Assembly: GCF_006345805.1 (NCBI RefSeq)
Contig: NC_043021.1
Span: 27,404,001 to 27,468,000, forward strand
DNA length: 64,000 bases
DNA from: Octopus sinensis
Lineage: Eukaryota
Direction of reading: 5' to 3'
Each line of letters begins with the position of its first letter. Position 1 is the first letter of the stretch. The position numbers were made by a program, and so were the translations under genes. Under the pieces are notes generated by a model, which made no database searches, was not told where the DNA came from, and was given only the letters and a program-made list of their open reading frames with translations. This document shows, piece by piece, positions 1-57,640 of this stretch.

Positions 1-244
1 ACTGATATATGAAAAATATATGGCTTGTGTTGTATATACCAGCGATTATAATTATTTTTTTTATTTTATCGCAATTTGATTTGTTTACATATTTCTCGAT
101 AAATTATGAGCGCCAGGCGATATACCAGAATTCCTAGTGTTGTCGGGACGTTCGGGTCTCTGCGCTGAGTGATATGATTAGTTAGGGAGAGTAATTCATT
201 AGACGCACATGCTTCTAGTGAGTTAGGATCCCAGAAAAACAGGG

Positions 245-3200
245 TCTCACTGAAGAATTCTCCCTGGGCAAATAAATTATCTTATTGCTGAAAAGAAAGA
301 AACTGCAGTCTGAGAATTACCGGTTTAGTAAATGTTTTTATCTTCATTTCACTTAATTTATCAAGCTTCTGTATTCCTAGCACATATTTCGCCTTAATGT
401 ACTGATATATGAAAAATATATGGCTTGTGTTAGTAATACCAGCCAGCGATTATAATTATTTTTATTTTATCATCGCATTTGATTTGTTTACATATTTCTC
501 GATAAATTATGAGCGCCAGGCGATATACCAGAATTCCCTAGTGTTGTCGGACGTTCGGAGTCTGCGCAGTGATATGATTAGTTAGGAGAGTAATTCATTA
601 GACGCACATGCTTCTAGTGAGTTAGGATCCCAGAAAAACAGGGTCTCACTGAAGAATTCTCCCTGGGCAAATAAATTATCTTTATTGCTGAAAAGAAAGA
701 AACTGCAGTCTGAGAATTACCGGTTTAGTAAATGTTTTTATCTCTTCATTTCACTTAATTTATCAAGCTTCTGTATTCCTAGCACATATTTCGCCTTAAT
801 GTACTGATATATGAAAAATATATGGCTTGTTTTAGTATACCCAGCGATTATAATTATTTTTATTTTATCGCAATTTGATTTGTTTACATATTTCTCGATA
901 AATTAATGAGCGCCAGCGATATACCAGAATTCCCTAGTGTTGTCGGACGTTCGGAGTCTGCGCAGTGATATGATTAGTTAGGGAGAGTAATTCATTAGAC
1001 GCACATGCTTCTAGTGAGTTAGGATCCCAGAAAAACAGGGTCTCACTGAAGAATTCTCCCTGGGCAAATAAATTATCTTTATTGCTGAAAAGAAAGAAAC
1101 TGCAGTCTGAGAATTACGGTTTAGTAAATGTTTTTATCTTCATTTCACTTAATTTATCAAGCTTCTGTATTCCTAGCACACATATTTCGCCTTAATGTAC
1201 TGATATATATGAAAAATATATGGCTTGTGTTAGTAATACCAGCGATTATTATTTTTTTTATTTTATCGCAATTTGATTTGTTTACATATTTCTCGATAAA
1301 TTAAGAGCGCCAGGCGATATACCAGAATTCCCTAGTGTTGTCGGGACGTTCGGAGTCTGCGCAGTGATATGATAGTTAGGGAGAGTATTCATTAGACGCA
1401 CATGCTTCTAGTGAGTTAGGATCCCAGAAAAACAGGGTCTCACTGAAGAATTCTCCCTGGGCAAATAAATTATCTTTATTGCTGAAAAGAAAGAACTGCA
1501 GTCTGAGAATTACCGGTTTAGTAAATGTTTTTATCTTCATTTCACTTAATTTATCAAGCTTCTGTATTCCTAGCACATATTTCGCCTTAATGTACTGATA
1601 TATGAAAAATATATGGCTTGTGTTAGTAATACCAGCGATTATAATTATTTTTATTTTATCGCAATTTGATTTGTTTACATATTTCTCGATAAATTATGAG
1701 CGCCAGGCGATATACCAGAATTCCCTAGTGTTGTCGGGACGTTCGGAGTCTGCGCAGTGATATGATTAGTTAGGGAGAGTAATTCATTAGACGCACATGC
1801 TTCTAGTGAGTTAGGATCCCAGAAAAACAGGGTCTCACTGAAGAATTCTCCCTGGGCAAATAAATTATCTTTATTGCTGAAAAGAAAGAAACTGCAGTCT
1901 GAGAATTACCGGTTTAGTAAATGTTTTTATCTTCATTTCACTTAATTTATCAAGCTTCTGTATTCCTAGCACATATTTCGCCTTAATGTACTGATATATG
2001 AAAAATATATGCTTGTGTTAGTAATACCAGCGATTATATTATTTTTTATTTTATCGCAATTTGATTTGTTTACATATTTCTCGATAAATTATGAGCGCCA
2101 GGCGATATACCAGAATTCCCTAGTGTTGTCGGGACGTGAGTCTGCGCAGTGAGATTATTGGAGTTTCTTAGACGCACAGCTTCATCATTAGACATTTAGT
2201 GAGTTTCCCACAGGTCTCACTGAAGAATTCTCCCTGGGCAAATTATCTTTATTGCTGAAAAGAAAGAAACTGCAGTCTGAGAATTACCGGTTTAGTAAAT
2301 GTTTTTATCTTCATTTCACTTAATTTATCAAGCTTCTGTATTCCTAGCACATATTTCGCCTTAATGTACTGATATATGAAAAATATATGGCTTGTGTTAG
2401 TAATACCAGCGATTATAATTATTTTTATTTTATCGCAATTTGATTTGTTTACATATTTCTCGATAAATTAAGAGCGCCAGGCGATATACCAGAATTCCCT
2501 AGTGTTGTCGGGACGTTCGGAGTCTGCGCAGTGATATGATTAGTTAGGGAGAGTAATTCATTAGACGCACATGCTTCTAGTTAGTTAGGATCCCAGAAAA
2601 ACAGGGTCTCACTGAAGAATTCTCCCTGGGCATATAAATTATCTTTATTGCTGAAAAGAAAGAAACTGCAGTCTGAGAATTACCGGTTTAGTAAATGTTT
2701 TTATCTTCATTTCACTTAATTTATCAAGCTTCTGTATTCCTAGCACATATTTCGCCTTAATGTACTGATATATGAAAAATATATGGCTTGTGTTAGTAAT
2801 ACCAGCGATTATAATTATTTTTATTTTATCGCGATTTGATTTGTTTACATATTTCTCGATAAATTATGAGCGCCAGGCGATATACCAGAATTCCCTAGTG
2901 TTGTCGGGACGTTCGGAGTCTGCGCAGTGATATGATTAGTTAGGGAGAGTAATTCATTAGACGCACATGCTTCTAGTGAGTTAGGATCCCAGAAAAACAG
3001 GTCTCACTGAAGAATTCTCCCTGGGCAAATAAATTATCTTTATTGCTGAAAAGAAAGAAACTGCAGTCTGAGAATTACCGGTTTAGTAAATGTTTTTATC
3101 TTCATTTCACTTAATTTATCAAGCTTCTGTATTCCTAGCACATATTTCGCCTTAATGTACTGATATATGAAAAATATATGGCTTGTGTTAGTAATACCAG

Positions 3201-4655
3201 CGATTATAATTATTTTTTTTATTTTATCGCAATTTGATTTGTTTACATATTTCTCGATAAATTATGAGCGCCAGGCGATATACCAGAATTCCCTATGTGT
3301 TGTCGGGACGTTCGGAGTCTGCGCAGTGATATGATTAGTTAGGGAGAGTAATTCATTAGACGCACATGCTTCTAGTGAGTTAGGATCCCAGAAAAACAGG
3401 GTCTCACTGAAGAATTCTCCCTGGGCAAATAAATTATCTTTATTGCTGAAAAGAAAGAAACTGCAGTCTGAGAATTACCGGTTTAGTAAATGTTTTTATC
3501 TTCATTTCACTTAATTTATCAAGCTTCTGTATTCCTAGCACATATTTCGCCTTAATGTACTGATATATGAAAAATATATGGCTTGTGTTAGTAATACCAG
3601 CGATTATAATTATTTTTATTTTATCGCAATTTGATTTGTTTACATATTTCTCGATAAATTATGAGCGCCAGGCGATATACCAGAATTCCCTAGTGTGTCG
3701 GGACGTTCGGAGTCTGCGCAGTGATATGATTAGTTAGGGAGAGTAATTCATTAGACGCACATGCTTCTAGTGAGTTAGGATCCCAGAAAAACAGGGTCTC
3801 ACTGAAGAATTCTCCCTGGGCAAATAAATTATCTTTATTGCTGAAAAGAAAGAAACTGCAGTCTGAGAATTACCGGTTTAGTAAATGTTTTTTTATTTCA
3901 TTTCACTTAATTTATCAAGCTTCTGTATTCCTAGCACATATTCGCCTTAATGTACTGATATATGAAAAATATATGGCTTGTGTTAGTAATACCAGCGATT
4001 ATAATTATTTTTATTTTATCGCAATTTGATTTGTTTACATATTTCTCGATAAATTATGAGCGCCAGGCGATATACCAGAATTCCCTAGTGTTGTCGGGAC
4101 GTTCGGAGTCTGCGCAGTGATATGATTAGTTAGGGAGAGTAATTCATTAGACGCACATGCTTCTAGTGAGTTAGGATCCCAGAAAAACGGTCTCACTGAA
4201 GATTCTCCCTGGGCAAATAATTATCTTTATTGCTGAAAAGAAAGAAACTGCAGTCTGAGAATTACCGGTTTAGTAAATGTTTTTATCTTCATTTCACTTA
4301 ATTTATCAAGCTTCTGTATTCCTAGCACATATTTCGCCTTAATGTACTGATATATGAAAAATATATGGCTTGTGTTAGTAATACCAGCGATTATAATTAT
4401 TTTATTTTATCGCAATTTGATTTGTTTACATATTTCTCGATAAATTATGAGCGCCAGGCGATATACCAGAATTCCCTAGTGTTGTCGGGACGTTCGGAGT
4501 CTGCGCAGTGATATGATTAGTTAGGGAGAGTAATTCATTAGACGCACATGCTTCTAGTGAGTTAGGATCCCAGAAAAACAGGGTCTCACTGAAGAATTCT
4601 CCCTGGGCAAATAAATTATCTTTATTGCTGAAAAGAAAGAAACTGCAGTCTGAGA
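245..4655 (+). ncRNA. 12 tandem type I hammerhead ribozyme motifs, one per satellite unit (retrozyme-like)
   Basis: Each unit reads tctca-CTGAAGA-[long stem II]-GAAA-CTGCAG-TC-tgaga. Predicted GUC cleavage falls after 310, 710, 1107, 1503, 1899, 2277, 2673, 3068, 3468, 3863, 4255 and 4650. Unit 4 reads GAAC instead of GAAAC. Confidence 0.85.
1833..1904 (+). ncRNA. Representative hammerhead motif (unit 5)
   Basis: Stem I TCTCA/TGAGA; core CTGAAGA; stem II TTCT/AGAA plus an inner GCA(A)ATAAA/TTTATTGC hairpin; GAAA; self-complementary helix III ACTGCAGT; cleavage triplet GTC. Confidence 0.85.
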
Positions 4656-4822
4656 ATTACCGGTTTAGTAAATGTTTTTATCTTCATTTCACTTAATTTA
4701 TCAAGCTTCTGTATTCCTAGCACATTTTCGCCTTAATGTACTGATATATGAAAAATATATGGCTTGTGTTAGTAATACCAGCGATTATAATTATTTTTAT
4801 TTTATCGCAATTTGATTTGTTT

Positions 4823-4831
4823 ATATATATA

Positions 4832-4884
<53 letters not shown>

Positions 4885-4900
4885 TGTATATATATATAAT
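4823..4900. repeat. (TA)n microsatellite bounding the satellite array
   Basis: Direct reading of the sequence. Confidence 0.95.
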
Positions 4901-5085
4901 ACAAAGATGGGACAAGAACGCAAAACATCAAGACAGACAATACAAAGAAAACAAAGACGGGTCATTCGGAGTTTTCTTTCCTCAGTTGAGTTCCAGATTA
5001 TCTTTGCTATTTCAGTTGGTTATACTTGAGTTTGCTCCAATCTGGCCAGCCCCAAAGAAAGACTAAGCTAAGAGCATTAGATTCC
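4900..5085 (-). mobile_element. Degenerate Penelope-type pLTR remnant (homologous to 23900-24335)
   Basis: Shares gggacaagaacg..aaaacat and ggccagcccca..gaaa.actaagct..gagcatta with the 23.9-kb copy. The minus strand has a decayed CTGAGGA...CGAA motif. Confidence 0.55.
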
Positions 5086-5604
5086 TTATATACACACATA
5101 TACATATATACATATAGGCATACATACACACACGCACACACACACACACACACACATATATACACATGTAAATATAGGTATACATATATACACACATATA
5201 GATAAATACACATATATAACAATTTATTGTAGCTTAGAAACTCAGCATGAAAACGATATGAATTATGAATAAACTTTTCTATAATTAATTAATTAATTAG
5301 CTTATGTCATAACAACCACATAGCGCAATATAATCTATTTAAAAGGTGTTCTTTAAATAACTGTTGCATATATGTTTACCATGATGGGTCTGTTATGATG
5401 GCTATAAACGTATGTCTATTATTTTTTACTTGCTCCTCTCATTAGACTGCAGTCGAGCTGGGAAACGTCCTTGAAGAATTTTTAGTCTGAGGAATCGACA
5501 TCAAGACATATTTTGTAAAGCTGGCACTTACATAATCGATTCCTTTTGCTGAACTACTAAGTTACCGAAACGTAACCTAATCAACAAACACAAGCACACA
5601 CCAC

Positions 5605-6915
5605 ATTTCTCGACATTTCTGTCAACATGCACTACTCCGCTCTCACCACATCCATCCACTACAGACACACCGACTCACACTTCTACCTTAACTTCTCCTC
5701 CTCCCACCCCAAACACACCAAGCTCTCCATCCCCTACTCCCAATTCCTCCGTCTTGCCACTTCATCCTTTTTGGATATCCCCAGACCACTATTCACACAG
5801 CCTTTGCCAGAGCTTGTTCCGTGGACCGTGTCTCTGCTGTCTTTGCCTGCACCCACCCGCCGTTGCTCGTCTCACGATTCTCCTTACCTACTACCCCCCA
5901 GCCCACCATTCTCCGGGCCTTCCGGCGACTCCAGTATGACCCCTCCACGTCGCACATCTTCCCCAACCTACTTCTCCTTCAACATGCGTGACCTCCTGGT
6001 CCACAGTTTCTTCCCTAACCTCACATCCCTATCTGGCTCGTTCCCCAGCTCCCACCCACACTACTGCACTTGCCTCTACCTCTCCAACACCACTATCCTC
6101 ACAGGCACCTATCATTGTCCCTACCATATCATCCTTTACCTGCACTTCTATCAACGTCATTTGCTGCATCTCCTGCTCTTTCTGGCCTTCTCTACTGGTC
6201 ATTCACTACAGCACCTATCTGTTTGTGCAGAGGGGCCATTCGGACTCCCGTCATCGCCGTGAACAGGAATTAATGTTCTCTCTTCGCTCCTTTGCTCCAC
6301 ATGGGTTCAACTCTCCACATCTCTTCATCTGACACCTACTTCCTTTCTTCACTTCTAACCACCTTCACTCTTCATTGACACCACCTCCATACCCACCCTA
6401 CCCTCATACCTCCATCTCCACGTCACACTCACACTACACCACACACCACATCTCACCACCACACACCAATCCACATACCACATACCACTGACCACTTCCC
6501 ACACCATACACTATCATCCACACACCCACACACCCACACATTACAGTTACACACGCACATATCCACACAAGTCAGTCACTAGTCCCTATCCACACACACA
6601 CACACATTCTGACATACACACACACGCACGCGCACCTTCGCTTTGGGATCACCTATACTTTATTATCTCCCCTTCATTCAACTTCTCCTGTCGAATCTTT
6701 TTCTCAACTAGTCGCCATGCTTGACCCCTAAATTCACATGTTTTATTTATTCACTCTCTGTTTATTTTCTCTTATTCCTTTCTATTGAGGAGCACAGGCT
6801 CGAAACGTAAAAGACTTTCTCGCTCTCTCGAGCGTCAGGCTAATACACTTACTTGTTGTTCACACACATGCCTTCGTCTTTTGTTTTTCTGTAAATTTAA
6901 ACTATATAATATATA
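5605..6915 (+). mobile_element. 5'-truncated, frameshifted Penelope-like element (RT thumb, GIY-YIG endonuclease, 3' pLTR)
   Basis: FLDISV...HTDSHFYLNFSSSHPKHTKLSIPYSQFLRL, then FTCTSINVICCISC and REQELMFSLRSFAPHGFNS. The 3' end carries the gctcgaaacgtaaaag pLTR motif. Confidence 0.9.
6778..6813 (+). ncRNA. Minimal hammerhead-like motif in the pLTR (decayed core)
   Basis: cttt-CTATTGA-G-GAGC-acag-GCTC-GAAAC-GTA-aaag; G5 is mutated to A. Confidence 0.55.
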
Positions 6916-7062
6916 TGCGACGGGTCTCGTCTGCCAAATCACTTTACAAGACTTTGGTCGGCACAATAGAAGACACCTGCCCAAGGTGCCACGCAGCGGG
7001 ACTGAACCCAGAACCATCTGATTAGGAAGTAGACTTCTTACCGCACGTCAACACCTGCGTCT
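6915..7062 (-). mobile_element. tRNA-derived SINE, family B (CORE-like centre), head fragment
   Basis: Reverse complement contains gggttcagtcccgctgcgtggcaccttgggcaggtgtcttc. There are many other copies in the window. Confidence 0.8.
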
Positions 7063-7618
7063 ATAAAAACATTTGTAATATTATTATTTATATAAACCCT
7101 TTTAAATACGATATACTCTTATATATACATGAGGCTTCCCAGTCACATGGTAAGAAGCTTACTTCCAAATCACATGGCTTCGGGTTCACTCCCATTGTGT
7201 GGCACCTTAGGCAAGTCTCCTCTACTATAGCCTGGCGTGACCAGTGCCTTGACAGTGGGTATTTGTAGATGGAAACCGCGAAAGAAGCCTGTCAACGCGG
7301 AGTAGATGAAACAGGGACAACTGATGAAGGGGAATATTCCTTGTGTTGCATCTCTCATTTCTCTGTTTTTTTCGTTGTCCGAAAAAATACTTCGTTTCTG
7401 TTTTTGTTTTTATGTTTTCGTTTCCTATTGTGTTCAACATTTTTTTGATGTCCTGTACCTATATATGCATGTATATATACATATAATAGAAGGTTTGGAG
7501 ATGATGTAGGTATGTACATATATGTATGTATATATGTATATATATATGCATATATATATTTATATATTATTTATATTATTATATGATCGAACGCCACGCA
7601 TCCTTTTCCAAGTAAGTT

Positions 7619-7710
<92 letters not shown>

Positions 7711-7736
7711 ATCTATCTATCTATCTATCTATCTAT
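7619..7736. repeat. (ATCT)n microsatellite
   Basis: Direct reading. Similar tracts occur at ~12974-13065 and ~45428-45515. Confidence 0.95.
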
Positions 7737-8027
7737 ATATGTATATATCTGCCTGTGTGTCTTTATACTTGTGTTTGTCTCCCATCACCGTTTGACAACC
7801 GGTGTTGGTGTGCTTATGTCCCCGTAAGCTAGCGGTTTGGCAAAAAGAGAACGATTGAATAAGTACTAGGCTTCAGAAATAAGTCCTTAGGTCGATTTGT
7901 TCGATTCCCCCCTCCAAGGCAGTGTTCAAGCATGGCCGCAGTCAAATGACTGTAAGAAGTAAAAGTATAAACGAATATATTCACTTATGTGTGTGTGCGT
8001 GTGTGTGGGCGTGTTTGTTTTTGTGCT

Positions 8028-31536: not shown

Positions 31537-31590
<54 letters not shown>

Positions 31591-31593
31591 ATA

Positions 31594-32190
31594 CAGGCGC
31601 AGCAGTGGCTGTGTGGCAAGAAGCTTGCTTCCCAACTACAGGGTTCCGGGTTCAGTCTCATTGCGTGGAACCTTGGGCAGGTCTCTTCTACGATAGCCTC
31701 GGACCGACCAAAGCCTTGTTAGTGGATATGGTAGATGGAAAAAGAGTAAAGAGTAAAGAGTATATATATAGGCGCAGAAGTGGCTGTGTGGTAAATAGCT
31801 TGCTAACCAACCACATGGTTCCGGGTTCAGTCCCACTGCGTGGCATCTTGGGCAGGTGTCTTCTGCTATAGCCCCGGGCCGACCAATGCCTTGTGAGTGG
31901 ATTATGTAGACGGAAACTGAAAGAAGCCTGTCGTATATATGTATATGTATATATGTGTGTATATGTATGTGTTTGTGTGTCTGTGTTTGTACCCCTAGCA
32001 TTGCTTGACAACCGATGCTGGTGTGTTTACGTCCCTGTCACTTAGTGGTTCGGTAAAAGTGACCGATAGAATAAGTAGTAGGCTTACAAAGAATAAGTCC
32101 TGAGTTCGATTTACTCGACTAAAGGTGGTGCTCCAGCATGGCCGCAGTCAAATGACTGAAACGTGTAAAAGAGTAAAGAGTAAAGAGTAT
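31594..32190 (+). mobile_element. Two adjacent family B SINE copies (one head-only, one near full length)
   Basis: ggcgcag..gtggctgtgtgg heads at ~31594 and ~31770; tail ccagcatggccgcagtcaaatgactgaaac. Confidence 0.85.
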
Positions 32191-39619: not shown

Positions 39620-41845
39620 CAGCGATAGAATAAGTACCTCACCTCCTATTGCCCTCTGCTCTCCAACTCCACGTTTAAATACGAACAGATTGTGTCCTCC
39701 ACTATTCGTGAACTCATTTTCTCCTCCCGTCTCTCTCCCACCGCCTCCACTTTCATTGTCCGTATTCCATGCACCTGCACTACTTACATCCTTCCCAAAA
39801 TCCACAAGCCCGACAACCCTGGCCACCCCATCGTCTCCGCCTGCAACCGCTCCACGGAAATAACCTCTAAATACCCCGACCGTGTCCTTGCCCCTAGTGA
39901 CTTCCCTTCCCTCACATCCACGACTCCAGCCATGCCCTCCATCTGTTTAACACTTTCTCCTTCCCTTCTGGCTCCTCTCAACTTCTCTTCGCTCTTGATA
40001 TCAAAAGTTTATATACGGTGAGCCCACACAACGAAGAACTTTTTGTGCTCAAACTCTTTCTAGACCTCCGGCTTGATCCTCAACCTGACACCTCTACACT
40101 TCTTCGTCAGGCTGAACTCGTCCTTTCCTTCACCTAATCTCGGGAGTGGCCATGGGAACGTGAATGGGCACCAACGATGCGAACTGTTCGTTGGCAACTT
40201 TGAGGTCCAAATATTCTCATAGTTCACTGGTCCCACTCCTTAGCTATATGGACATTACATCGATGACTGTATCAGCGCAACCTCACTCCTCCACGAACAA
40301 CTGTTCTCCTTCCTCTCCTTTGTCCAGTCCTTCTATCCTTGCCCTCGAATACTCGTGCACCTTCTTTAACTCTTCCGTCGAAATTTCTCGACATTTATGG
40401 CAACATACACCACTCCACTCTCATCCACAACAAACACACTCACACTCTTATCTTAACTTCTTCTCCTCCTCCCACCCTCCTCCCACCCTACTCACACCAA
40501 GCTCTCCAGCTCCAAATCCCAATTCATTCGTCTGTGCAGGCTCTGCAGTAACGACTCAGTTTCAATTCATGGCTCACCACTTCATCCGACATGGATATCT
40601 CCTCGCCATTATTCCCACTGCCCTTACTCGGGCACGATCTGTGGACCGTGCCTCTGCTCTTTCTCCTCGTACTCGCCTCACCTTTACTCGTTCCCCGTTT
40701 CCTATCACCTACCACCCCTCCATCCTACCCCTCCAACGCATCACTCTCCGAGTTTTACGGCGACTCCAGTCAAACCCCTCCACCTCGTACATCTTCTCTA
40801 ACCTACCCCTTCCATCCTTCAGAAGAGCCAATAACCCACTGTTTCTTCCCTAACTCCGCCACTCAGCCTGGCTCCTTCCCCTGCTCCCACACCTCTCCCT
40901 ACCTCTCCAAAACTACTCTCCTCACAATCACTCATTTCCCTCCCCATCACGTCACCGACACCTTTGCCTGCATCGCTAGTAATGTTATTTACTGCATCTC
41001 CTTCTCTCTTTGTCCTTCCCTGTACATTGGTCGCTGCTTGGTTGACCGGTTCGTGGAGCACCTCCAGGACATCAGACTGGGCAATGGCACCCCGGAATCG
41101 CGCCATTTCCGCTCTACTGGTCATTCGCTACAACATCGGTCTGTGTTCGAACCGTTTCTGCGTAGGCCTCCACCTTCACCGTGAACAGGAATTAAACTTC
41201 TCTATTCGTTCCTTTGCTCCACATGGGCTTAACTCATCTTCACTCTTCATCTGACACCAAACTCACCTATCTTCATTTGGCACCAATTCCACACGGATTC
41301 TCACTCACCTTCCACAATCTCCAACTACACACCCGCATGCCACCCACCTCCATACCCTCACCCACACACACCACTATACACACACCACTATACACACACC
41401 ACTATACACACACCACTATACACACACCACTATACACACACCACTATACACACACCTATACACATCAATTGCCACGCACAACACACACACACCGCACACA
41501 CGTTACACGCGCATAGACTCACACAAACCATTCTCACATACACACGCTTGCGGACTTTCTGTTGTTGGAGTCACCATGAATTATTTCCCTTTCATTCAAC
41601 CTCTCCTTATTATTTTCTCCCTTTCATTCAACTTCCCTTTTGCCAATGGGACCTTTTGCCAATGCTGGACCATTGAACTCAATACATTTTTTTCATTCTC
41701 ACTCAATTTATTTTCTCTTATTCCTTTCTGTCGAAGAGGGTAGGCTCAAAACGTAAAAGACTTTTCCATTTTACCCGAGTGTCAAACTAATACACTTATT
41801 GTTGTTCTTATACCTGTCTTAGTCTTTGTTTTTTTTTATAAATTT

Positions 41846-41850
<5 letters not shown>
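39620..41850 (+). mobile_element. Degenerate Penelope-like element (RT, GIY-YIG, 3' pLTR), same family as 5605-6915
   Basis: YILPKIHKPDNPGHPIVSAC, GVAMGT, YIDDCI, FLDI, FACIASNVIYCISFSLCPSLYIG, REQELNFSIRSFAPHGLNS; a 14-bp minisatellite ccactatacacaca at ~41371-41460; decayed HHR motif at 41724-41759. Confidence 0.92.
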
Positions 41851-41882
<32 letters not shown>

Positions 41883-43660
41883 CAAACAGGCTTCTTTCAG
41901 TTTCCGTCTACCAAATCCACTCACAAGGCTTTGGTCAGCCCGAGGTTATAGCAGAAGAGACTTGTCTAAGGTGCAACGCAGTGGGACTGAACCCGGAACC
42001 ATGTAATTGGGAAGCAGGCTTCTTACTACACAGCCACGCTTGCACCTCATGTGGAAGAAAAATTGTTATTGCACCATTACATATCGAAACACCGAATTTA
42101 GTATTAAAATATATCGTAATGAATTTGTATACGCTGATTCTCATTGCTTGATTTGAGTTGTGATGCCTGTGAATAAGTGGTGAAAGTTGTTAAGGATAAG
42201 TAAACTTGTGAAACATAAGACAGTATTTTATGGAAAATGAGAAGAAGGAATAAAGAAGGAAACAAACAAGTGATGTAGCAGAACTCGATCGATCTACACA
42301 GGCATAGACGCATCGTATTTTATCGTAAGCTATTTGTTCTTTTGACATTATTGTGGCCTGAGATCAAATGACTAAACTAAAATTTCAAAGAGAGAGAAGA
42401 TATTTTTAAACACTGAATACAATAAATTTTCTTACGTCTGAACCTTGAAAGCAGGAATGAATTAAAACTATACGACTAAAGTATTTATCGCGAACGTAAC
42501 AAAAAAAAATTGAAATATGAACGTTTGTGTGATGAATAGGTTAGAGATGGCAAAGTGCACTTGTGTCAATTCTTTTGTTCACTCATATTTTTCTGCTTCT
42601 GCCACCACATTGAAAAAATATAACTGTGTGTTTTGTGTTTGCGGTTAAAAATAATAGAAATTATAAGCTTTTAATGCATGATAACCATTTGGTTTGACTG
42701 AGGTTAGGCAATGCAATTTTTTTTACGAATAGAAAGGTAGTATGTCAACTCGGGAAATTATTTTTGATATATCTTGGTGTAGCTCAGCATGTCGGATATT
42801 ATAGTGGGTGAACGGTTAGCACATCAAACATGGGTATTTGTTCTGTGTGTTAAGTTCAAATTCCACCTGAATCAATTTTGGCTTTTCCGGGTGTATTTTT
42901 TTTAAAGAAAAAATACCAATCGAAGACGGTGCATTTCGGAAAGTATAAAAGCTTCAAATGTTAACACATGACCAGGAAGTTCGTGGGTGGAGGCAAGTCG
43001 ATTATATCGACCCCAGTGCTCAACCGGTATTTACATTATCGATCCCAAAAGAATAGAAGGCAAAGTCGATATCGGTGAACTTTCAAATAAGAACGTAAAG
43101 ACGGACTAAATGCCGCTAAGCATTTGGCTCGGCATGCAAACGATCCTGCCAACTCGCCGCGAAAGATTAAAAATAATGAATTGGATGGTTTGTAATATTA
43201 GATCGGGTTCTTTTATTTACTGAATCCTAAATCTTTTTAAGGTACAAAAAAAAAATTGTACTCCCAACAGCCTCCTGGTCTGGTGAGGAGACTGAGCCAA
43301 ACCCTAGCAATAACAAAAGTGAGTGGGGAGAGCTGGAGGGAGATAGGAAGGGGCTTCTTCAGCTGAAGTGGCAAGTAGTTTGGAAAAGGACTGAAGGAAT
43401 GGGTGAATACAAGCATGTACACACACCACACAGACACACAGACACATACACACACACAAACACAAATTCACACACATATAACTATATAATTATTTTAGCC
43501 AATTGTGTTTGATGTTAATTTGACCTTTTCAGCGTGTGTGGTATGGTGTTATTGTAAAAGCAGCTTTTTAAGTGAACGACTTACACCTTCTCCTCGCGCT
43601 ATATATAACGAAGTAAGGGCGCAAAGCAGTGTTTACGTATAATCACAATTTAAGCTAGAT

Positions 43661-49874: not shown

Positions 49875-50794
49875 TTGATATGATCAGTTCCTTCTATAGT
49901 TTGTGTCTTTCGGACCAAGTACCCATACTCTATCTTCTCAGTGAAGTGGTTCATTTCTTTTTATTTTGTTCCCTTGATATATGAAATTTAACACTACCTC
50001 CTCATCAACTCTTGTTTTATATCTCTCCTCAAGTTCATTAGCTACACTAATCAGTTTGTTGATTTCATGGCCACAAATGTGGGCACGATAGTTACGGGTA
50101 TCTACCCCTGCTGCAGATGTTGCGTCAGTGTCACAATACGTGCTTCATACGACATGAATAAAGATTCGAGGCCAAGGCCACCAGCCTTCGGTGAGCCTAC
50201 ATCTTTATTGACGTTTACGTTTACTGAAACACTGAGCAGCTGTCCAGTTCGCAGTTTACATGCCGGTCTTCTATCAGTATTTGTCTGCCAAATCCACTCA
50301 CAAGGCCCAAGACTACAGTAGAAGAAACTTGCCCAAAGTACCACGTAGTGGGACTGAACCCGGGTTCATGTGGTTGGGAAGCAAGCATTTTACCACACAG
50401 CCGCGCTGGATAGTGTTGTTGTTTATGACAAGCCAGAGTTGAGAGTTACACGACATCAATGCGAGAAAGTTATGGTCGCATTATACTAATACACCGTTGT
50501 AGACTGTAGCAGCCAAAAACAATTTGTCAATACACAAAAATCATATATATATATATATACACGCACGCCCAGAAATACACACACACACACATACACGCAC
50601 ACATACGCGCACACATTTGTGTGTGTATGTATGCGTTATTGTTTATGTATTTCACGAGTCACAGATTACCGTTATTAACAAAAAAACTACAAGAGAATAT
50701 CTATAATTTAAATTTACAATCCATATGAAATAACTGTATAATATACAGCGTAATATAATATATGATATAAAATATATATACTATGTCTCTCCAC

Positions 50795-50884
<90 letters not shown>

Positions 50885-50901
50885 GTCTATCTATCTATCT
50901 G

Positions 50902-50956
<55 letters not shown>

Positions 50957-51029
50957 GTCTATCTATCTATCTGTCTATCTGTCTATCTATCTATCTGTCT
51001 ATCTATCTATCTGTCTATCTATCTATCTG

Positions 51030-51096
<67 letters not shown>

Positions 51097-51129
51097 GTCT
51101 ATCTATCTATCTGTCTATCTATCTATCTG

Positions 51130-51188
<59 letters not shown>

Positions 51189-51209
51189 GTCTGTCTATCT
51201 ATCTATCTG

Positions 51210-51276
<67 letters not shown>

Positions 51277-51284
51277 GTCTGTCT
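50795..51284. repeat. ~490-bp (ATCT)n tract with GTCT variants
   Basis: Direct reading; it abuts the Tx1 5' junction. Confidence 0.97.
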
Positions 51285-54200
51285 ATGCGCGTGGCTTGGG
51301 GTCCCCTTGGAAACAAGGGTACCTCTTAAATGACATAAAGTCACATAAGTTACAAATCATAGCCATAAGCGAGACCAGACTCCACAATCCGCGGGCCCTA
51401 AAGACCATGTTTGGCGGACAGTTCAACATTTATTTTTCCCCCTGTCTGCCGAGAATGGGCGGTAGTGGCACCGCGGTACTTTTTCACAAGAGTCTGGATC
51501 TCAATGTAAGGACAATATTCGTAGACCCGGAGGGTAGACTGGTCGTCCTGGATGTCGACGGCAGCAATGGGTGCGCTTTTCGACTCGTATCAGTTTACGC
51601 ACCGCCCTTAACAGGTCGGGCGGATTTCTTTCAACGTCTAGAAGTTTTCTTGGGAACGTCTCGTCCTTTACTCTTAGTGGGGGATTGGAATGCTACCTTG
51701 GACACGCATGTAGACTACGTGGGTAGAGATAGGAATAGACGAGGATGCAAATGCCTCAGAGACCTGCTCAGACGCTTTCAACTGTCTGACAGGTTCCGAC
51801 TAGACCACCCGAATGCGCCAACGTGGACATGGAGCAACCGCATCGGGTCGTCGAGATCGTATCTAGATAGGATACTGTGTAGGACAGTAGATAGAGATAG
51901 CATAGGATGTCCACAATTCCACATAGTCAGCTACACGGATCACAAACTTGTGACATGTACGCTAGACTTAGATAAGACACTTAGGCAGGGTCCCGGATAC
52001 TGGAAACTAAACGCGTCTTTCCCATCGAGACAAGTTTTCAGAGACCGGATTAGCACACTAGTAAAGAGGGCTTTGACGGGAGCCATCATCAACAACAAAT
52101 GGTGGTTTGCCCTCAAGAGAGCAGTAAAAGCAGAAGCGATTAGGTACAGCAAAGCACTAGCCATAGATAGAAATAGAGTAGAGGGTGAGCTAGTTAAGAA
52201 GCTAGAAGAGGCAATTAGAAGCGGCATCGCATCCGACGTTTTGGCGGCGAGGTTGGCCCTCGACCAACACTTCAACGCCAAACACGAAGGATGTGCTGTC
52301 AGAGCTAGGATGCGTGCTCTAAGGAACGAAGGTGTTGGAGCCGCGAGAGAGGCCCGGGTGGCAGAGGCGCAACAGGGCAACAAAGCCACCATTCGGTCAC
52401 TGGTAGATGAACAGGGGCGCGAATTGCTCGAGCCAAGTAAAATGTGTGAGGCCTTTCAGCAGCATTTTGCCCGACTGTTCGGAACGAGTGGAGGGCAAGA
52501 ACGTAGGGTGGACTTCAGTGCCTACCTACATAGCCTACCACGACTCTCGACAAGAAAGGCAGGGTGCTGCGAAGGTGCCATCACGGCGGCGGAAGTGCGG
52601 GAAGCGATGGCAGAATGCTCGAGGGACAAATCACCGGGTTTGGATGGTCTACCCTACGAGCTTTACAATTGTATGCCAGACTTGTTTGGAGATCTCTTGG
52701 CGGCGGTGTACTGCAACTGGCAGCAAAACGGGAGCATTCCTGGTTTTGTGAGCCGAGGAGCCGTAACACTGCTGAAGAAAGATCTAAACAAGGGAAATGT
52801 AATAGATAACTTTAGGCCCATCACTCTGCTTAATGCAGACTTGAAAATTTTGGCCAAGGTGCTAGCCAAGAGGTTGGCGCTTGTCATCGAGAAACTGGTC
52901 GACAAGGCGCAAACATGCGCCGTGCCAGGCCGGACCATCCATGACAACCTCCATCTGATGCGCTACATCATAGACAGGGTAGTTAACGAACCTGGCATGG
53001 GTGGGGCCCTGATCAACTTGGATCAATCGAAAGCCTTTGATAGGGTAGACCATCGATACTTGGAGGCAGTCCTGAGAGCGGCTGGTTTCGGTCCCGTCTT
53101 CCGCGGCTGGATAGCTGCCTTGTACAGAGGCATCCGTTCGGTAATTCGCGTAAATGGACATCTATCAAGACCTTTCGACATTGCACGTTCGGTCCGTCAG
53201 GGATGCCCCCTCTCGGCGCTTCTATACGTATTGACTCTTGAGCCACTACTGCGGAAGCTGGCGACTCTAAGGGGCATCCCGCGAGAATTGGGATGCGGGA
53301 CGAGCGTGTCTGCATACGCGGACGACGTCACCGTCATAGTGTCTAGCCACGAGCACATCGAGCTGGTCGGCGAGACACTGAAAAACTACGAAGCGGTGAC
53401 AGGAGCGAAAATCAACCGGGAAAAGTCAGTGGGCTTGCGACTAGGCACCTGGAGAAGCAAGCCCATGCCGTCCACCAGCGCCTCCGTCGTGGGACGCTGG
53501 ACCGACGGCCCGGTTGAGTTGCTCGGGGTCTGGTTTGGTTCGGACCTCCAAGTGGAGAAGAACTGGAACGAGATAACGAGTAGGGTGGTCACTCTCGCCC
53601 GGCAGTGGGCCGAGAGGAAACTGTCGCTAAAAGGTCGAGCGGAGGTGGCGAACACGTACATCGCGTCCGTCATCTACTACCGCCTGACCGTCGTACCTTG
53701 TCCCGACCCTACCATCACCAAACTACAACGCATCCTCTTTCGCTTCTTGTGGAAAGGATGCGTCCCGATGGTCAGGCGATCCATTTGCTGTCAACACCCG
53801 TTAAAAGGAGGGCTGGGCATGCCGTGGTTGATGATGCGCAGACACGCGCTGAGACTGCGACATCTCTGGCTCTATGTAGACGACGGTGAACAGGTGTGGT
53901 CGCCGTTTGTGAGGCACGCTTTCCCGCAGCTCGTCTCCATGACCGAATTGCAGTCGTGGATCAAAAAGAGGCCGAGGAAGGGCGATGGCACCGCGAGTGT
54001 CGCGTTGCTCTCAAGCAACTCTGCCGTCCTGGGTCGACCTTAAGTGACTTCAACACAACCAAAGCATTCTATAGGGGTTTAGTGGAGGGGAGGTACGACG
54101 ACGAGCTCGGGGCGAACCTGGACGTCGACGAGGAGTACCTGACCCGCCTGTTCGGGACGACTTTCGAGCCAGGGCCCATGGACAACTTCCAGAGATCCCT

Positions 54201-54699
54201 GGCCTGGCAGTGCTACCGAGAAGCGCTACCCGTTCGGGATAAGCTCTACAGACACGGCTCGAGAAACACGGGGCCGACCTGCCCGAGATGCGGTCAGAGC
54301 GACGAAACCGTTCTGCACGCACTCGTTCAGTGTCCAACAATTTCCGACCTGTGGGCTTATGTCGAACAACTGCTGTCACGTGTGGGACGAGTCGGTTTAT
54401 CAGCTGAGTCTATCGTCAATATTGTCACGCCTCCTTCCTTCAAACGGGAAGGAAGAGCTATTTTCATCATCCTTGTGGCTATGGCGAAAGAATGTATCTG
54501 GTGGACGCGTCTGAAAGGATTGGAGACAAACACTTTCCTCTCTGGTCAATCTCTCATCAACTTCTTCAAGTACCACTTGAAAAGGAAAGTGAGAGTAGAG
54601 AGGCAAGTTTTGTCTAGCGAATGTTTTAAAAAAAGATGGGTGAATGTAGCAAGAATGGCACGTATGAATGACGAAGCCACCTTGAGCATAGTCCTATGA
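51284..54699 (+). pseudogene. ORF2: APE endonuclease, reverse transcriptase and CCHC zinc knuckle, with one frameshift at ~53985
   Basis: ARGL..IIAISETRL, LLLVGDWNATL, YLDRIL, TDHKLV; KSPGLDGLPYELY, FRPITLLNADLKILAK, LDQSKAFDRV, RQGCPLS, AYADD; CPRCGQSDETVLHALVQC. Two overlapping ORFs (to 54043 and 53896-54699) join with a 1-nt insertion. Confidence 0.95.
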
Positions 54700-56479: not shown

Positions 56480-57640
56480 TTAAGAGATGAGGAATTATGT
56501 ACGTTATTTACATTATCTACATTTGACGGATATTTGTCCTCACCTTGTTTGTTGTCAAGACAACGTTTTGGCTGATATACACTCCAGCCTTCATCAGGTG
56601 CCTAAGGTATTTTTCGATGATATTATTATTGTTGTTGTTATTGTTGTTCAGGTCACTGCTTGGAATTGAACTCGGAATCGTGAGGTTAGTAGCCCGCGCT
56701 CTTAACCACTACGCCATATACCCGTGGGCAATTATGGAGTGAATTTTAAGGCTTATAAATCTAATATTTTTCTATCCTTACCTAATACCGGTTCCCATAT
56801 GCCACTAATATCTGCACTCTGCTTAGGTTGTTGTGTCCTAGCATGTGTGCTGCTTATTTTAGTTTTTGTATTTTCCAGTGGTCTTCTCTGTCTATTATTT
56901 TAACTTTATCCCACAGGGAGAGGTGCTCTCCATTTTTCCATACATGATCAGCTGTATCCGATTTATCATTATCTCCTCGTGTCACAGCTTTGCGATGTTT
57001 GTCTACCCTTATTTTGAGGGGGTGGCAATTTTCGCCTTTGTATAACCTACCGCAGCTGCATGGGATGGAGTACATGCAGTTCTTGGTCATATTCTCTTCT
57101 ATTGGTGGTTTTACTTGAAGGAGATATTTGCGAAGTGTTGTATTACTCTTGAATACTGTTCTGATGTCATATGGGCCACACATCTTTTCGGAGAGGCCTT
57201 TCACATAGGGTAGACACACTGTGGACAGTTTATTGGCCTCATCCTCCCTTTTCTTCCTAATTGGAGTGGATAGTCTACTTTTGGGGTAGTTGTTACTTAA
57301 CAGATCGTTATTGAGCTTGATCATTTCTTCGTGGTGTGTGTCACGATCGCTACTTATATTCTTTGCACGATGTTTTAGGCACTGAGAAATCCCTCTCTTT
57401 ACACTGAATCGATGGTGGCAATTGAGGTTGAGGTATCAACCAGTAATAATAACAACAACAATAATTACAATAACAACACTAATAATAATAACATCGAAAA
57501 ATACATTAGGAATGAGAACTCAGGTTCGAAATTTCCCCAAGACACATGAAGAAGGCTGGAGAGTATATCAGCCGAAACGTTGTGTTAACAACAAACAAGA
57601 TGGGGACAAATATCCGTCGAATGTAAATAATGTAAATAAT
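56480..57640 (-). mobile_element. 5'-truncated Penelope-like element (GIY-YIG endonuclease) with an inverted pLTR copy
   Basis: HRFSVKRGISQCLKHRAKNIS..NNYPKS..LPYVKGLSEK..CMYSIPCSCGRLYKGE..RVDKH..DHVW (56854-57420). The pLTR is on the minus strand at 56480-56640 and on the plus strand at 57430-57640. HHR motifs at 56557-56602 (G12A) and 57541-57586 (C3A). Confidence 0.92.
56648..56723 (-). other. tRNA-like segment (Pol III A and B boxes) inside the Penelope 3' region
   Basis: gggtatatggcgtagtggttaagagcgcgggctactaacctcacgattccgagttcaattcc: A box TGGCGTAGTGG, B box GAGTTCAATTCC, 7-nt loop CTACTAA with an imperfect anticodon stem. Confidence 0.7.

What the first reader, a model, noticed from the sequence alone, without database searches (positions are those of the whole stretch)
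1..4823. Ribozyme satellite: every 396-bp unit encodes a hammerhead ribozyme (retrozyme-like array)
Seen in the sequence: each unit has the hammerhead core CTGAAGA and GAAA, a 5-bp stem I (TCTCA/TGAGA) placed correctly around a GTC triplet, and a self-complementary helix III (ACTGCAGT). There are 12 such motifs about 395-396 nt apart, and 11 have an intact core. Established: hammerhead-bearing tandem repeats are known (newt satellite 2, Schistosoma Sm-alpha, cave-cricket pDo500, metazoan non-LTR retrozymes), and their palindromic helix III supports cleavage as dimers. Inference: a + strand read-through transcript would be cut into ~396-nt monomers (5'-UGAGAAUU...CUGCAGUC>p) that could circularise and be re-inserted by Penelope-type RT. 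I do not know of this family being described in a cephalopod.
Basis: partly seen in the sequence, partly recalled or inferred. Interest (0 to 1): 0.95.

Follow-up and report, generated by a model that had tools for sequence, protein, structure and literature searches.

The report
Octopus tandem repeat with hammerhead motif
A 396-bp DNA repeat, present at least 12 times in a row in what looks like an octopus genome, carries in every copy a motif that matches a self-cutting hammerhead RNA in everything except one of its three stems, so it is probably a new cephalopod example of the known "retrozyme" repeats, but cutting is unproven.

Summary
Window 1-4823 is a tandem array with a 396-bp consensus unit, 12.2 copies and 35% GC. 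It runs off the left edge of the window and ends in a (TA)39 tract.

Every unit has UCUCA-CUGAAGA-(43 nt)-GAAA-CUGCAGU-C|UGAGA. Eleven of 12 cores are intact. Rfam's type I hammerhead model aligns helix I, both core strands, palindromic helix III and the GUC site. It scores 21.2 bits against a gathering score of 34 (E 0.0034 in a 116-nt scan). My relaxed descriptor expects only 0.0004-0.0013 chance hits per unit.

The weak point is helix II. It is 43 nt long, has an A·A mismatch where G10.1-C11.1 is expected, has only 4 basal pairs, and is no more stable than shuffles (p about 0.1). The copies are nearly identical and I could not retrieve copies from elsewhere, so covariation cannot be tested.

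The same window holds Penelope-like element remnants. Their minimal hammerheads are supported by covariation, yet they do not score on Rfam at all, so missing the Rfam threshold does not disqualify the motif. The satellite motif does not belong to that sequence family.

Verdict: probably a retrozyme-type satellite acting through dimeric hammerheads (about 0.5). Rivals are a dead relic (0.28) and a chance motif (0.15). It is a new member of a known kind, of moderate interest.

The parts
1..4823 (+). Tandem array of a 396-bp unit (12.2 copies, 35% GC). Cut by the left window edge. The last unit is truncated 173 nt after a predicted cleavage site.
   Evidence: TRF; unit extraction and consensus; GC content
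3402..3473 (+). Representative complete hammerhead-like motif (72 nt), identical to the consensus
   Evidence: Rfam RF00163 alignment over 3401-3474, 21.2 bits, E 0.0034; pattern scan
3402..3406 (+). Helix I, 5' strand (UCUCA). Pairs with 3469-3473.
   Evidence: Read from the sequence; paired in the Rfam alignment
3407..3413 (+). Core strand C3-A9 (CUGAAGA)
3414..3456 (+). Putative helix II, 43 nt. It has an A·A mismatch at 10.1/11.1, then UUCU/AGAA (4 bp), an internal loop, and a GGCAA(A)UAAA/UUUAUUGCU hairpin. This is the weak element.
   Evidence: Constrained folding gives -5.9 kcal/mol against shuffles at -3.4 +/- 2.0. The basal 4 bp are matched by 7.7% of shuffles. The Rfam alignment skips this region.
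3457..3460 (+). Core strand G12 A13 A14 plus A15.1 (GAAA)
3460..3467 (+). Helix III (ACUGCAGU), an 8-nt perfect palindrome. As a monomer it gives 2 bp plus a tetraloop. Between two copies it gives an 8-bp duplex (-11.1 kcal/mol).
3468..3468 (+). C17. Predicted cleavage is between 3468 and 3469 (GUC|U).
   Evidence: cleavage itself is inferred
3469..3473 (+). Helix I, 3' strand (UGAGA)
245..315 (+). Motif copy 1 (one T missing in the distal part of helix II)
644..715 (+). Motif copy 2, intact
1041..1112 (+). Motif copy 3, intact
1438..1508 (+). Motif copy 4. GAAAC reads GAAC, so the core is broken, or this is a homopolymer read error.
1833..1904 (+). Motif copy 5, intact
2215..2282 (+). Motif copy 6. 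Core intact; 4-nt deletion in the distal part of helix II.
2607..2678 (+). Motif copy 7. Core intact; one A>T change in the distal part of helix II.
3002..3073 (+). Motif copy 8, intact
3797..3868 (+). Motif copy 10, intact
4191..4260 (+). Motif copy 11. One A missing after CUGAAGA and one missing in helix II.
4584..4655 (+). Motif copy 12, intact
4822..4898 (.). (TA)39 microsatellite at the right junction. The unit sequence at the break (GTTTA|CATAT) shares microhomology with TATAT.
   Evidence: (TA)n tracts of at least 8 units cover 3.3% of the window.
56554..56605 (-). Context: Penelope-like minimal hammerhead copy lying 3' of the ORF remnant 56854-57324(-). G12 is mutated to A.
57538..57589 (+). 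Context: inverted second copy of the Penelope-like minimal hammerhead. C3 is mutated to A.

Best explanation
The array is a retrozyme-type (non-LTR retrozyme-like) satellite of an octopod genome. Each 396-bp unit encodes, on the + strand, a type I hammerhead ribozyme with these parts:
- a complete catalytic core (CUGAAGA ... GAA);
- a 5-bp helix I;
- a GUC cleavage site;
- a very short, palindromic helix III;
- an unusually long and weak helix II.

Proposed mechanism (inferred, not shown):
1. A multimeric + strand transcript forms double hammerheads. The ACUGCAGU segments of two copies pair into an 8-bp helix III.
2. Each ribozyme cuts after GUC. This releases 396-nt monomers (5'-OH-UGAGAAUU ... 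CUGCAGUC with a 2',3'-cyclic phosphate).
3. In the monomer a more stable alternative fold sequesters the core and the 5' strand of helix II, which protects the RNA from re-cleavage.
4. By analogy with coral, mussel and axolotl retrozymes, an RtcB-type tRNA ligase would circularise the monomers.
5. A Penelope-like reverse transcriptase would copy the circles into new tandem insertions, here possibly primed in a (TA)n tract.
For: Motif anatomy is shown directly in all 12 units. Rfam Hammerhead_1 aligns model positions 1-45 end to end at 21.2 bits, E 0.0034 for the 116-nt scan.

A chance motif is unlikely. My descriptor, with no helix II requirement, expects 0.0004-0.0013 hits per unit on both strands. 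None of the 13 simulated hits had a palindromic helix III.

A short palindromic helix III that forces dimeric action is the published hallmark of metazoan type I hammerheads (PMC4209133, PMC7229834). The duplex is computed at -11.1 kcal/mol.

The element matches the published retrozyme description of 170-400 nt units, GC below 45% and tandem multimers (PMC7229834): unit 396 bp, GC 35%, at least 12 tandem copies, and ORFs of 58 aa or less inside the array with no homologues.

A mismatch at the base of helix II has a precedent in an active natural retrozyme ribozyme. Axolotl HHR_Amex2 has a U·U there and cleaves well as a dimer (PMC7229834).

Missing Rfam's gathering score is not disqualifying. 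A covariation-supported Penelope-like hammerhead from the related loci gets no Rfam hit at all in an equal-sized scan.

Penelope-like remnants co-occur in the window.

An intact 13-nt core plus intact helices I and III in the amplified master copy argues for recent function. Both Penelope-like hammerhead relics in this same window carry core-breaking mutations.

The full-unit MFE pairs AUUCUCCCUG with the distant UAGGGAGAGU, giving an inactive conformer, as the model expects for a stable monomer.
Against: Helix II fails the canonical rules. It has A·A instead of the highly conserved G10.1-C11.1 and only 4 AU-rich basal pairs. It is 43 nt long with an internal loop. Its folding energy is reached by 11% of shuffles and its basal pairing by 7.7%.

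The score is 13 bits below Rfam's gathering score. The hit is lost by the filters in 441-nt, 5-kb and 64-kb scans.

The hammerhead-constrained fold (-7.3 kcal/mol) is 6 kcal/mol worse than the MFE of the 91-nt segment.

The circular unit is not unusually structured (z -1.5).

No covariation test is possible, because the units differ by 0-3 substitutions. The motif varies about as much as the rest of the unit.

There are no dispersed or solo copies in the other 59 kb. I found no copies in any collection I could reach.

The unit shows no similarity to the sampled Penelope-like flanks.

There is no RNA evidence of any kind.
Confidence: 0.5

Rival explanations
1. Dead relic. The unit descends from a hammerhead-bearing element (a retrozyme or a Penelope-like terminal repeat), but helix II has been disrupted or replaced by an insertion. 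The RNA no longer cleaves. The array grew at the DNA level by unequal crossing-over or replication slippage, like any satellite.
For: Helix II is the only element that fails, and it fails clearly. Copies are nearly identical, which is what recent DNA-level amplification or homogenisation gives. There are no dispersed copies in the window. The motif is not better conserved than the rest of the unit. Penelope-like hammerhead relics with broken cores exist in the same window.
Against: If the ribozyme had been free to decay, the 13 core positions, the 5-bp helix I and the 8-nt palindrome would not all be expected to remain perfect while helix II alone degenerated. A basal mismatch in helix II is tolerated in an active axolotl retrozyme (PMC7229834).
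Confidence: 0.28
2. Chance resemblance. This is an ordinary AT-rich satellite whose unit happens to contain CTGAAGA, GAAA, a PstI-type palindrome and a 5-nt inverted repeat in the right order.
For: The motif counts as one independent observation, not 12. The score is below Rfam's gathering score. Taking the E-value for this one family alone and scaling it to a genome of a few Gb, I expect roughly 20 chance hits of 21 bits or more. Helix II gives no independent support. There is no covariation, no RNA data and no relatives.
Against: The expected number of relaxed-descriptor hits in one 396-bp unit is 0.0004-0.0013, and lower still with a palindromic helix III. The motif sits in exactly the context where such ribozymes are known to occur: a low-GC tandem repeat of about 400 bp in a Penelope-rich invertebrate genome (PMC7229834).
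Confidence: 0.15
3. A terminal (pseudo-LTR) tandem of a Penelope-like element rather than an independent non-autonomous repeat.
For: Penelope-like elements insert as partial tandems and carry hammerheads in their terminal repeats (PMC4209133, PMC8557442). A decayed Penelope-like ORF remnant begins about 800 bp downstream, at 5605.
Against: Twelve or more head-to-tail copies of a 396-bp non-coding unit is not a pseudo-LTR arrangement. The downstream remnant is separated from the array by (TA)n and (AC)n tracts and shares no sequence with the unit. The covariance model of the Penelope-like hammerhead found here does not hit the satellite motif.
Confidence: 0.05

Closest known systems
Metazoan non-LTR retrozymes (coral Acropora millepora, mussel Mytilus galloprovincialis, axolotl; Cervera & de la Pena 2020, PMC7229834)
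   Same: Non-coding, low-GC tandem repeats with 170-400 nt units. There is one type I hammerhead per unit, with cleavage after GUC, so a multimeric transcript would be cut to unit length. They co-occur with Penelope-like elements. A mollusc example is already known.
   Different: Published invertebrate examples have a compact, stable helix II (about 4 bp) and mostly cleave well as monomers. Here helix II is 43 nt, mismatch-closed and weak. Expression, circles and genome-wide copies are documented for those elements and unknown here. The host would be a cephalopod, for which I found no report.
Newt satellite 2 / axolotl HHR_Amex1 and HHR_Amex2 (330-350 bp repeats)
   Same: Helix III is too short to be stable (1-2 bp capped by a palindromic tetraloop), so the ribozyme works as a dimer. 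Amex2 also has a mismatch (U·U) at the base of helix II. Unit size is similar.
   Different: The amphibian ribozymes keep a short canonical helix II and the loop 1-loop 2 tertiary contacts. Neither is recognisable here.
Minimal hammerheads of Penelope-like elements (Cervera & de la Pena 2014, PMC4209133), including the copies found in this window at 56554-56605 and 57538-57589
   Same: CUGAAGA followed by an extra A. Helix I is short (4-5 bp). Positions 15.2-16.2 are palindromic, and dimeric action is inferred. Both kinds are present in the same genome.
   Different: The Penelope-like motif has G10.1-C11.1, a 5-bp GC-rich helix II with covariation and no helix III loop (GAAACGUU). The satellite motif has none of these. 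It is not detected by a covariance model built from the Penelope-like copies.
Schistosoma Sm-alpha and cave-cricket pDo500 hammerhead satellites
   Same: Hammerhead embedded in a repeated, transcribed, non-coding unit of a few hundred bp.
   Different: Those ribozymes have canonical helices and experimentally shown cleavage. I did not compare sequences here, because I did not fetch them.

Membership tests
Hammerhead ribozyme, type I (Rfam RF00163) | Conserved core: C3 U4 G5 A6 N7 G8 A9 ... G12 A13 A14, A15.1-U16.1, H17 | tested here: met
   CUGAAGA, GAAA and GUC are present in 11 of 12 units. One unit reads GAAC.
Hammerhead ribozyme, type I (Rfam RF00163) | Helix I formed by the sequences directly 5' of C3 and directly 3' of H17 (open-ended, type I topology) | tested here: met
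   UCUCA/UGAGA, 5 Watson-Crick pairs. A possible 2-bp extension (GG/CC) follows a 4-nt bulge.
Hammerhead ribozyme, type I (Rfam RF00163) | Helix III closed by A15.1-U16.1. In metazoan type I it is short and palindromic. | tested here: met
   ACUGCAGU is a perfect 8-nt palindrome. The Rfam consensus for this segment is GAAACGcgCGUC. The duplex is -11.1 kcal/mol.
Hammerhead ribozyme, type I (Rfam RF00163) | Helix II directly between A9 and G12, closed by G10.1-C11.1, typically 4-8 bp plus a small loop | tested here: not met
   A·A at 10.1/11.1. Four pairs (UUCU/AGAA), then an internal loop and an AU-rich hairpin, 43 nt in all. Not more stable than shuffles. The Rfam alignment skips it.
Hammerhead ribozyme, type I (Rfam RF00163) | Score at or above Rfam's gathering score (34 bits) | tested here: not met
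   21.2 bits. No hit in the larger scans. Caveat: a covariation-supported Penelope-like hammerhead scores nothing at all.
Hammerhead ribozyme, type I (Rfam RF00163) | Helices kept by compensatory changes among relatives | tested here: inconclusive
   Units differ by 0-3 substitutions. I could retrieve no diverged copies.
Hammerhead ribozyme, type I (Rfam RF00163) | Mg2+-dependent self-cleavage 3' of H17 | not testable with these tools
   Needs in vitro transcription of one-unit and two-unit constructs.
Metazoan non-LTR retrozyme | Short tandem repeats, unit about 170-400 bp, from dimers to large multimers | tested here: met
   396-bp unit, at least 12.2 copies.
Metazoan non-LTR retrozyme | Low GC content (below 45%) and no protein-coding capacity | tested here: met
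   GC 35%. The longest ORFs inside the array units are 58-66 aa, and the consensus-unit ORFs I searched have no homologues.
Metazoan non-LTR retrozyme | A complete type I hammerhead in at least two consecutive units (operational rule of Li et al. 2026, 10.64898/2026.07.22.740005, with motif MFE below -5 kcal/mol) | tested here: inconclusive
   Consecutive units carry the motif and the 72-nt motif has an MFE of -11.9 kcal/mol. Whether their rnabob descriptors would accept this helix II is unknown. My strict helix II test fails.
Metazoan non-LTR retrozyme | Expressed as unit-length linear and circular RNA | not testable with these tools
   No RNA data are accessible here.
Metazoan non-LTR retrozyme | Circular RNA predicted to be stable and highly self-paired | tested here: inconclusive
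   Circular MFE -87.8 kcal/mol, 64% paired, z -1.5; 21 of 300 shuffles are as stable.
Metazoan non-LTR retrozyme | Co-occurrence with Penelope-like elements in the genome | tested here: met
   Penelope-like ORF remnants and two minimal-hammerhead copies lie in the window. The literature reports many Penelope families in Octopus vulgaris (PMC13282606).
Metazoan non-LTR retrozyme | Sequence relationship to the terminal repeats of a Penelope-like element (shown for Xenopus by Li et al. 2026) | tested here: not met
   No similarity to the Penelope-like sequences in the window or in five related loci. Model R1 does not hit the motif. I sampled only one or two Penelope-like families.
Metazoan non-LTR retrozyme | Many dispersed loci (monomers, dimers, multimers) across the genome | not testable with these tools
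   No other copy in the remaining 59 kb. No cephalopod genome could be searched by DNA.
Penelope-like element minimal hammerhead | Extra nucleotide between 9 and 10.1, G10.1-C11.1, helix II larger than usual (7-8 bp in the Schistosoma mansoni families described in PMC4209133), no helix III loop, location in terminal repeats next to an RT/GIY-YIG ORF | tested here: not met
   The satellite motif has the extra A only if helix II is shortened to 2 bp. It has no G-C closure, it has a 4-nt helix III loop, and it is not next to an ORF.

The most novel reading that the evidence does not exclude
This is an active hammerhead of an undescribed architectural variant. It would have a 43-nt, mismatch-closed helix II, with activity depending on dimerisation through the 8-nt palindrome. 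A 5-bp cross-helix pairing may also contribute: CAGGG, just 5' of helix I, is complementary to CCCUG inside helix II (read from the sequence, untested). The variant would drive abundant 396-nt circular RNAs in octopus tissues. That would make it the first cephalopod retrozyme, and one with no sequence link to the Penelope-like elements sampled here.
Probability: 0.25. Interest if true: 0.55.

Novelty: new member of a known kind. Interest (0 to 1): 0.4.

Why it matters
If it cleaves, it extends retrozymes (ribozyme-processed circular RNAs encoded by tandem repeats) to cephalopods. It would also give a natural test of how much irregularity helix II of a hammerhead tolerates when the ribozyme works as a dimer. 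It would add a class of non-back-spliced circular RNA that standard circRNA pipelines miss in octopus transcriptomes. If it does not cleave, it shows that core-plus-palindrome matches in satellites need a helix II check before being called ribozymes. Either way the class is already well described in other animals, including a mollusc, so the conceptual gain is modest.

Tried and rejected
1. Rfam at gathering threshold on the whole window, and at E<=10 on 5 kb and on 441 nt, gave no hammerhead hit. Only a 116-nt scan shows the 21.2-bit match. No other ribozyme family (twister, HDV-like, hairpin and others) appears on either strand.

2. I looked for a hammerhead on the minus strand, or in another register of the unit. 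There is none. The second CUGA (CUGAAAA) has A at position 8, and the two upstream GAAA sites give no helix III. I read both points from the sequence.

3. I tried to retrieve other copies for a covariation test. Exact look-ups of four window ORFs, two satellite-encoded and two from other repeats, and of the junction ORF found nothing. Two homology searches with satellite translations and two metagenome pattern scans also found nothing. My first translation query (minus strand, 76 aa) was a poor choice, because that frame has no start codon in the consensus.

4. I looked for similarity of the unit to the rest of the window and to five octopod loci. Only chance-level 12-34-nt matches turned up.

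5. I tried to name the Penelope-like ORFs with Pfam, including relaxed thresholds, and with a profile against PDB sequences. There were no hits. Their identification therefore rests on three things: my reading of the RT-end and GIY-YIG-type motifs in the consensus, the hammerhead immediately 3' of the ORF, and homologues in Octopus sinensis and O. vulgaris.

6. A descriptor hit at window 7321 (CTGATGA...) has no GAAA after its helix II. I take it as chance.

7. An apparent inverted repeat near 6900-7292 and 41886-42026 turned out to be copies of a dispersed SINE-like repeat. It is not Penelope-like structure.

8. A ViennaRNA cofold with a pseudoknotted constraint crashed. I replaced it with energies computed part by part.

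9. ARAGORN finds no tRNA-like gene in 1-8000.

Full report
**1. What is there**

Tandem Repeats Finder gives a single array at 1-4828 with period 395, 12.2 copies, 95% matches and 3% indels. The array begins at the first base of the window, so its left end and its true length are unknown.

I cut the array at the predicted cleavage sites. This gives 11 full units of 378-400 nt and a 396-nt consensus with 35% GC. Units differ from the consensus by 0-3 substitutions plus scattered single-base indels, and one unit has a larger deletion. The 12 motif copies are therefore one independent observation. The indel-dominated variation looks like long-read error rather than divergence.

The last unit breaks off 173 nt after a predicted cleavage site, at GTTTA, and passes into a (TA)39 tract. 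The consensus continues with CATAT at that point, so the junction lies in microhomology with the microsatellite. (TA)n tracts of at least 8 units cover 3.3% of this window. That makes the adjacency only weakly informative. It is still in line with the microsatellite insertion bias reported for Penelope-like elements (PMC8557442).

**2. The motif**

All 12 units read UCUCA-CUGAAGA-(about 43 nt)-GAAA-CUGCAGU-C-UGAGA.

In hammerhead numbering the elements are:
- helix I strand 2.5-2.1;
- C3-A9;
- the helix II region;
- G12 A13 A14 A15.1;
- helix III, where ACUGCAGU is a perfect palindrome closed by A15.1-U16.1;
- C17;
- helix I strand 1.1-1.5.

Rfam finds nothing at its gathering scores, nothing in a 5-kb scan at E<=10 and nothing relevant in a 441-nt scan. 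A 116-nt scan uses laxer filters. It reports Hammerhead_1 (RF00163) over model positions 1-45, at 21.2 bits against a gathering score of 34, with E 0.0034. Helix I, both core strands, helix III and GUC are all aligned. Helix II is replaced by an unaligned 43-nt stretch where the model has 14. No other ribozyme family appears on either strand.

**3. Is it chance?**

I wrote a descriptor no stricter than what the candidate satisfies. It requires helix I of at least 5 bp with G-U allowed, CUGANGA, a 4-60 nt spacer, GAAA, helix III closed by A-U plus one further pair, and H17. It places no requirement on helix II.

It finds the satellite motif, nothing on the minus strand of the unit, and one hit in the remaining 118 kb of both strands. 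That one hit lacks a GAAA next to its helix II. In 6-Mb first-order Markov sequences it gives 10 hits with satellite composition and 3 hits with window composition. That is 0.0004-0.0013 expected per unit on both strands, and none of these hits has a palindromic helix III.

If I take the Rfam E-value for this single family and rescale it, I expect a few chance hits per million for one unit but about 20 for a whole genome of a few Gb. This is my arithmetic. The motif alone would not stand in a genome-wide scan. It does stand inside a tandem repeat of about 400 bp, which is exactly the context where such ribozymes are known. I put chance at about 0.15.

**4. The weak point: helix II**

Directly after A9 comes A, and directly before G12 comes A. 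The position where G10.1-C11.1 is "highly conserved" (PMC4209133) is therefore an A·A mismatch.

The best pairing is UUCU/AGAA (4 bp), then an internal loop, then the hairpin GGCAA(A)UAAA-UUAUC-UUUAUUGCU. The 43-nt segment folds at -5.9 kcal/mol, against -3.4 +/- 2.0 for shuffles (11% are as stable). A basal helix of 4 bp or more is found in 7.7% of shuffles.

The hammerhead-constrained fold of a 91-nt segment is -7.3 kcal/mol, against an MFE of -13.4. In the MFE, the CUG of the core pairs with the CAG of helix III. In the full circular unit, the 5' strand of helix II (AUUCUCCCUG) pairs with a distant UAGGGAGAGU.

With helix III supplied in trans, the scaffold is -7.9 kcal/mol per copy and the 8-bp ACUGCAGU duplex is -11.1. 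A double hammerhead is therefore roughly level with two inactive monomers. It is accessible but not favoured.

One published precedent matters here. The axolotl HHR_Amex2 has a U·U mismatch at the base of helix II. It cleaves 22% in one hour as a monomer and much better as a dimer (PMC7229834).

**5. A positive control found in the same window**

A 156-aa ORF at 56854-57324 (minus strand) has 126 homologues. The best named ones are from Octopus sinensis (71% identity) and O. vulgaris. The consensus of 17 of them shows what I read as the C-terminal RT motif and the GIY-YIG-type nuclease motif of Penelope-like elements. Pfam and a PDB profile search do not name it.

I fetched the O. sinensis locus (L001) and four contigs of ENA assembly ERZ21867824. 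My descriptor then found a minimal hammerhead 250 nt downstream of the ORF in L001. Its homologues flank the window ORF in inverted orientation, at 57519-57626 (+) and 56518-56603 (-), with 87-90% identity.

The alignment of eight copies reads ACAC-CUGA(A/U)GA-A-GGCUG-loop-CAGCC-GAAACGUU|GUGU. Its features match the published description of these motifs (PMC4209133): a bulged A after A9, G10.1-C11.1, and a palindromic ACGU.

Helix II is 97% paired, and 3 of its 5 pairs show changes on both sides (GGCUG/CAGCC, GGCCG/CGGCC, GGCCA/UGGCC). No shuffle out of 500 reaches the observed covariation score, and slid registers collapse. Both window copies carry a core mutation (C3 to A; G12 to A), so they are relics.

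Two lessons follow:
- This genuine hammerhead gets no Hammerhead_1 hit at all in a 116-nt Rfam scan, whereas the satellite motif gets 21.2 bits. Missing the gathering score does not count against the satellite.
- A covariance model built from six of these copies (R1) finds only its own two copies in the window and not the satellite's + strand motif. The satellite ribozyme is not a copy of this Penelope-like ribozyme. The unit also shows no similarity to any sampled Penelope-like sequence.

**6. Comparison with what is known**

Non-LTR retrozymes are described as type I hammerheads inside tandem repeats of about 170-400 nt with GC below 45%. They are expressed as linear and circular RNAs in a coral, a mussel and the axolotl. 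They are circularised most likely by a tRNA ligase and are thought to be mobilised by Penelope-like elements (PMC7229834, PMC7761336). A 2026 preprint links Xenopus retrozymes to Penelope-like terminal repeats (10.64898/2026.07.22.740005).

How the array fares on each criterion:
- Met: unit size, GC content, tandem arrangement, lack of coding capacity and co-occurrence with Penelope-like elements.
- Not met: a canonical helix II, the Rfam threshold, and similarity to a Penelope-like terminal repeat.
- Inconclusive: self-pairing of the circular RNA (z -1.5) and covariation.
- Not testable here: RNA evidence and genome-wide distribution.

Full-text searches for hammerhead or retrozyme together with octopus or cephalopod return only a paper on Naiad elements, which lack canonical hammerheads, and an unrelated twister study. 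Neither a 2026 O. vulgaris repeat annotation nor the supplement of the 2020 retrozyme paper mentions such an element.

**7. Verdict**

The anatomy outside helix II is that of a dimer-dependent metazoan type I hammerhead in a retrozyme-like repeat, and chance is unlikely. However, catalytic competence is doubtful because of helix II, and every step after transcription is inference.

My estimates:
- active retrozyme-type element: about 0.5;
- hammerhead-derived but dead satellite: about 0.28;
- chance motif: about 0.15;
- part of a Penelope-like terminal tandem: about 0.05.

It would be a new member of a known kind, namely its first cephalopod representative, with an atypical helix II. Interest is moderate (0.4).

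Noticed in passing
window 56518-56605 (-) and 57519-57626 (+); also L001:10912-11022, L001:6938-7045, L003:9100-9215, L003:11145-11250, L004:3435-3540, L005:10870-10975: Penelope-like minimal hammerhead: ACAC-CUGA(A/U)GA-A-GGCUG-loop-CAGCC-GAAACGUU|GUGU. Compensatory changes in helix II are seen across copies from this window, Octopus sinensis and ENA assembly ERZ21867824. Both window copies have a core-breaking mutation. Rfam does not detect the motif.
   Followed up: yes
window 56854-57324 (-): A 156-aa ORF remnant that reads like the C-terminal RT end plus GIY-YIG-type nuclease of a Penelope-like element. It is flanked by the two inverted hammerhead-bearing segments, which is the '5'-truncated copy plus inverted partial copy' layout described for these elements. 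It has 126 homologues, the best named ones in Octopus sinensis and O. vulgaris. Pfam and PDB profile searches give no name.
   Followed up: partly
window 5605-7041 (+) and 40383-42026 (+): Two older, frameshifted copies of another Penelope-like-looking element, 64-68% identical to each other. Their ORF fragments are 5627-6332 and 40164-41184. The first lies only about 800 bp downstream of the satellite but shares no sequence with it.
   Followed up: partly
window 50783-54699 (+): A nearly intact non-LTR retrotransposon (LINE). The 1086-aa ORF has Exo_endo_phos and RVT_1 domains. It overlaps at its 3' end a 267-aa ORF with zf-RVT. Its 5' end runs into a (CTAT)123 microsatellite that is read through as part of the ORF.
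   Followed up: partly
window 31588-31916, 6900-7041, 7150-7292 (inverted), 41886-42026: Copies of a dispersed SINE-like repeat of about 140-175 nt, with a tRNA-like GGTTC..GGGTTCAGTCCCACTG segment. At 31588-31916 it forms a 175-bp x 1.9 tandem. ARAGORN calls no tRNA in 1-8000.
   Followed up: partly
whole window: Very high microsatellite density: 117 TRF rows and 75 (TA)n tracts of at least 8 units, covering 3.3% of the window. There are long (TA)n runs of 200-370 bp, plus (TATC)n and (CTAT)n runs up to 492 bp.
   Followed up: no
window 1900-2277: One satellite unit is 18 nt shorter than the rest (378 nt) and differs from the consensus at 38 indel positions. Differences among the other units are almost all single-base indels, which suggests uncorrected long-read errors in the assembly.
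   Followed up: partly
window 3328-3337 with 3402-3411 in the representative unit (unit positions 268-277 and 342-351): A 10-bp long-range complementarity (UAGGGAGAGU / AUUCUCCCUG) inside each unit. In the predicted full-length fold it sequesters the 5' strand of the putative helix II.
   Followed up: partly
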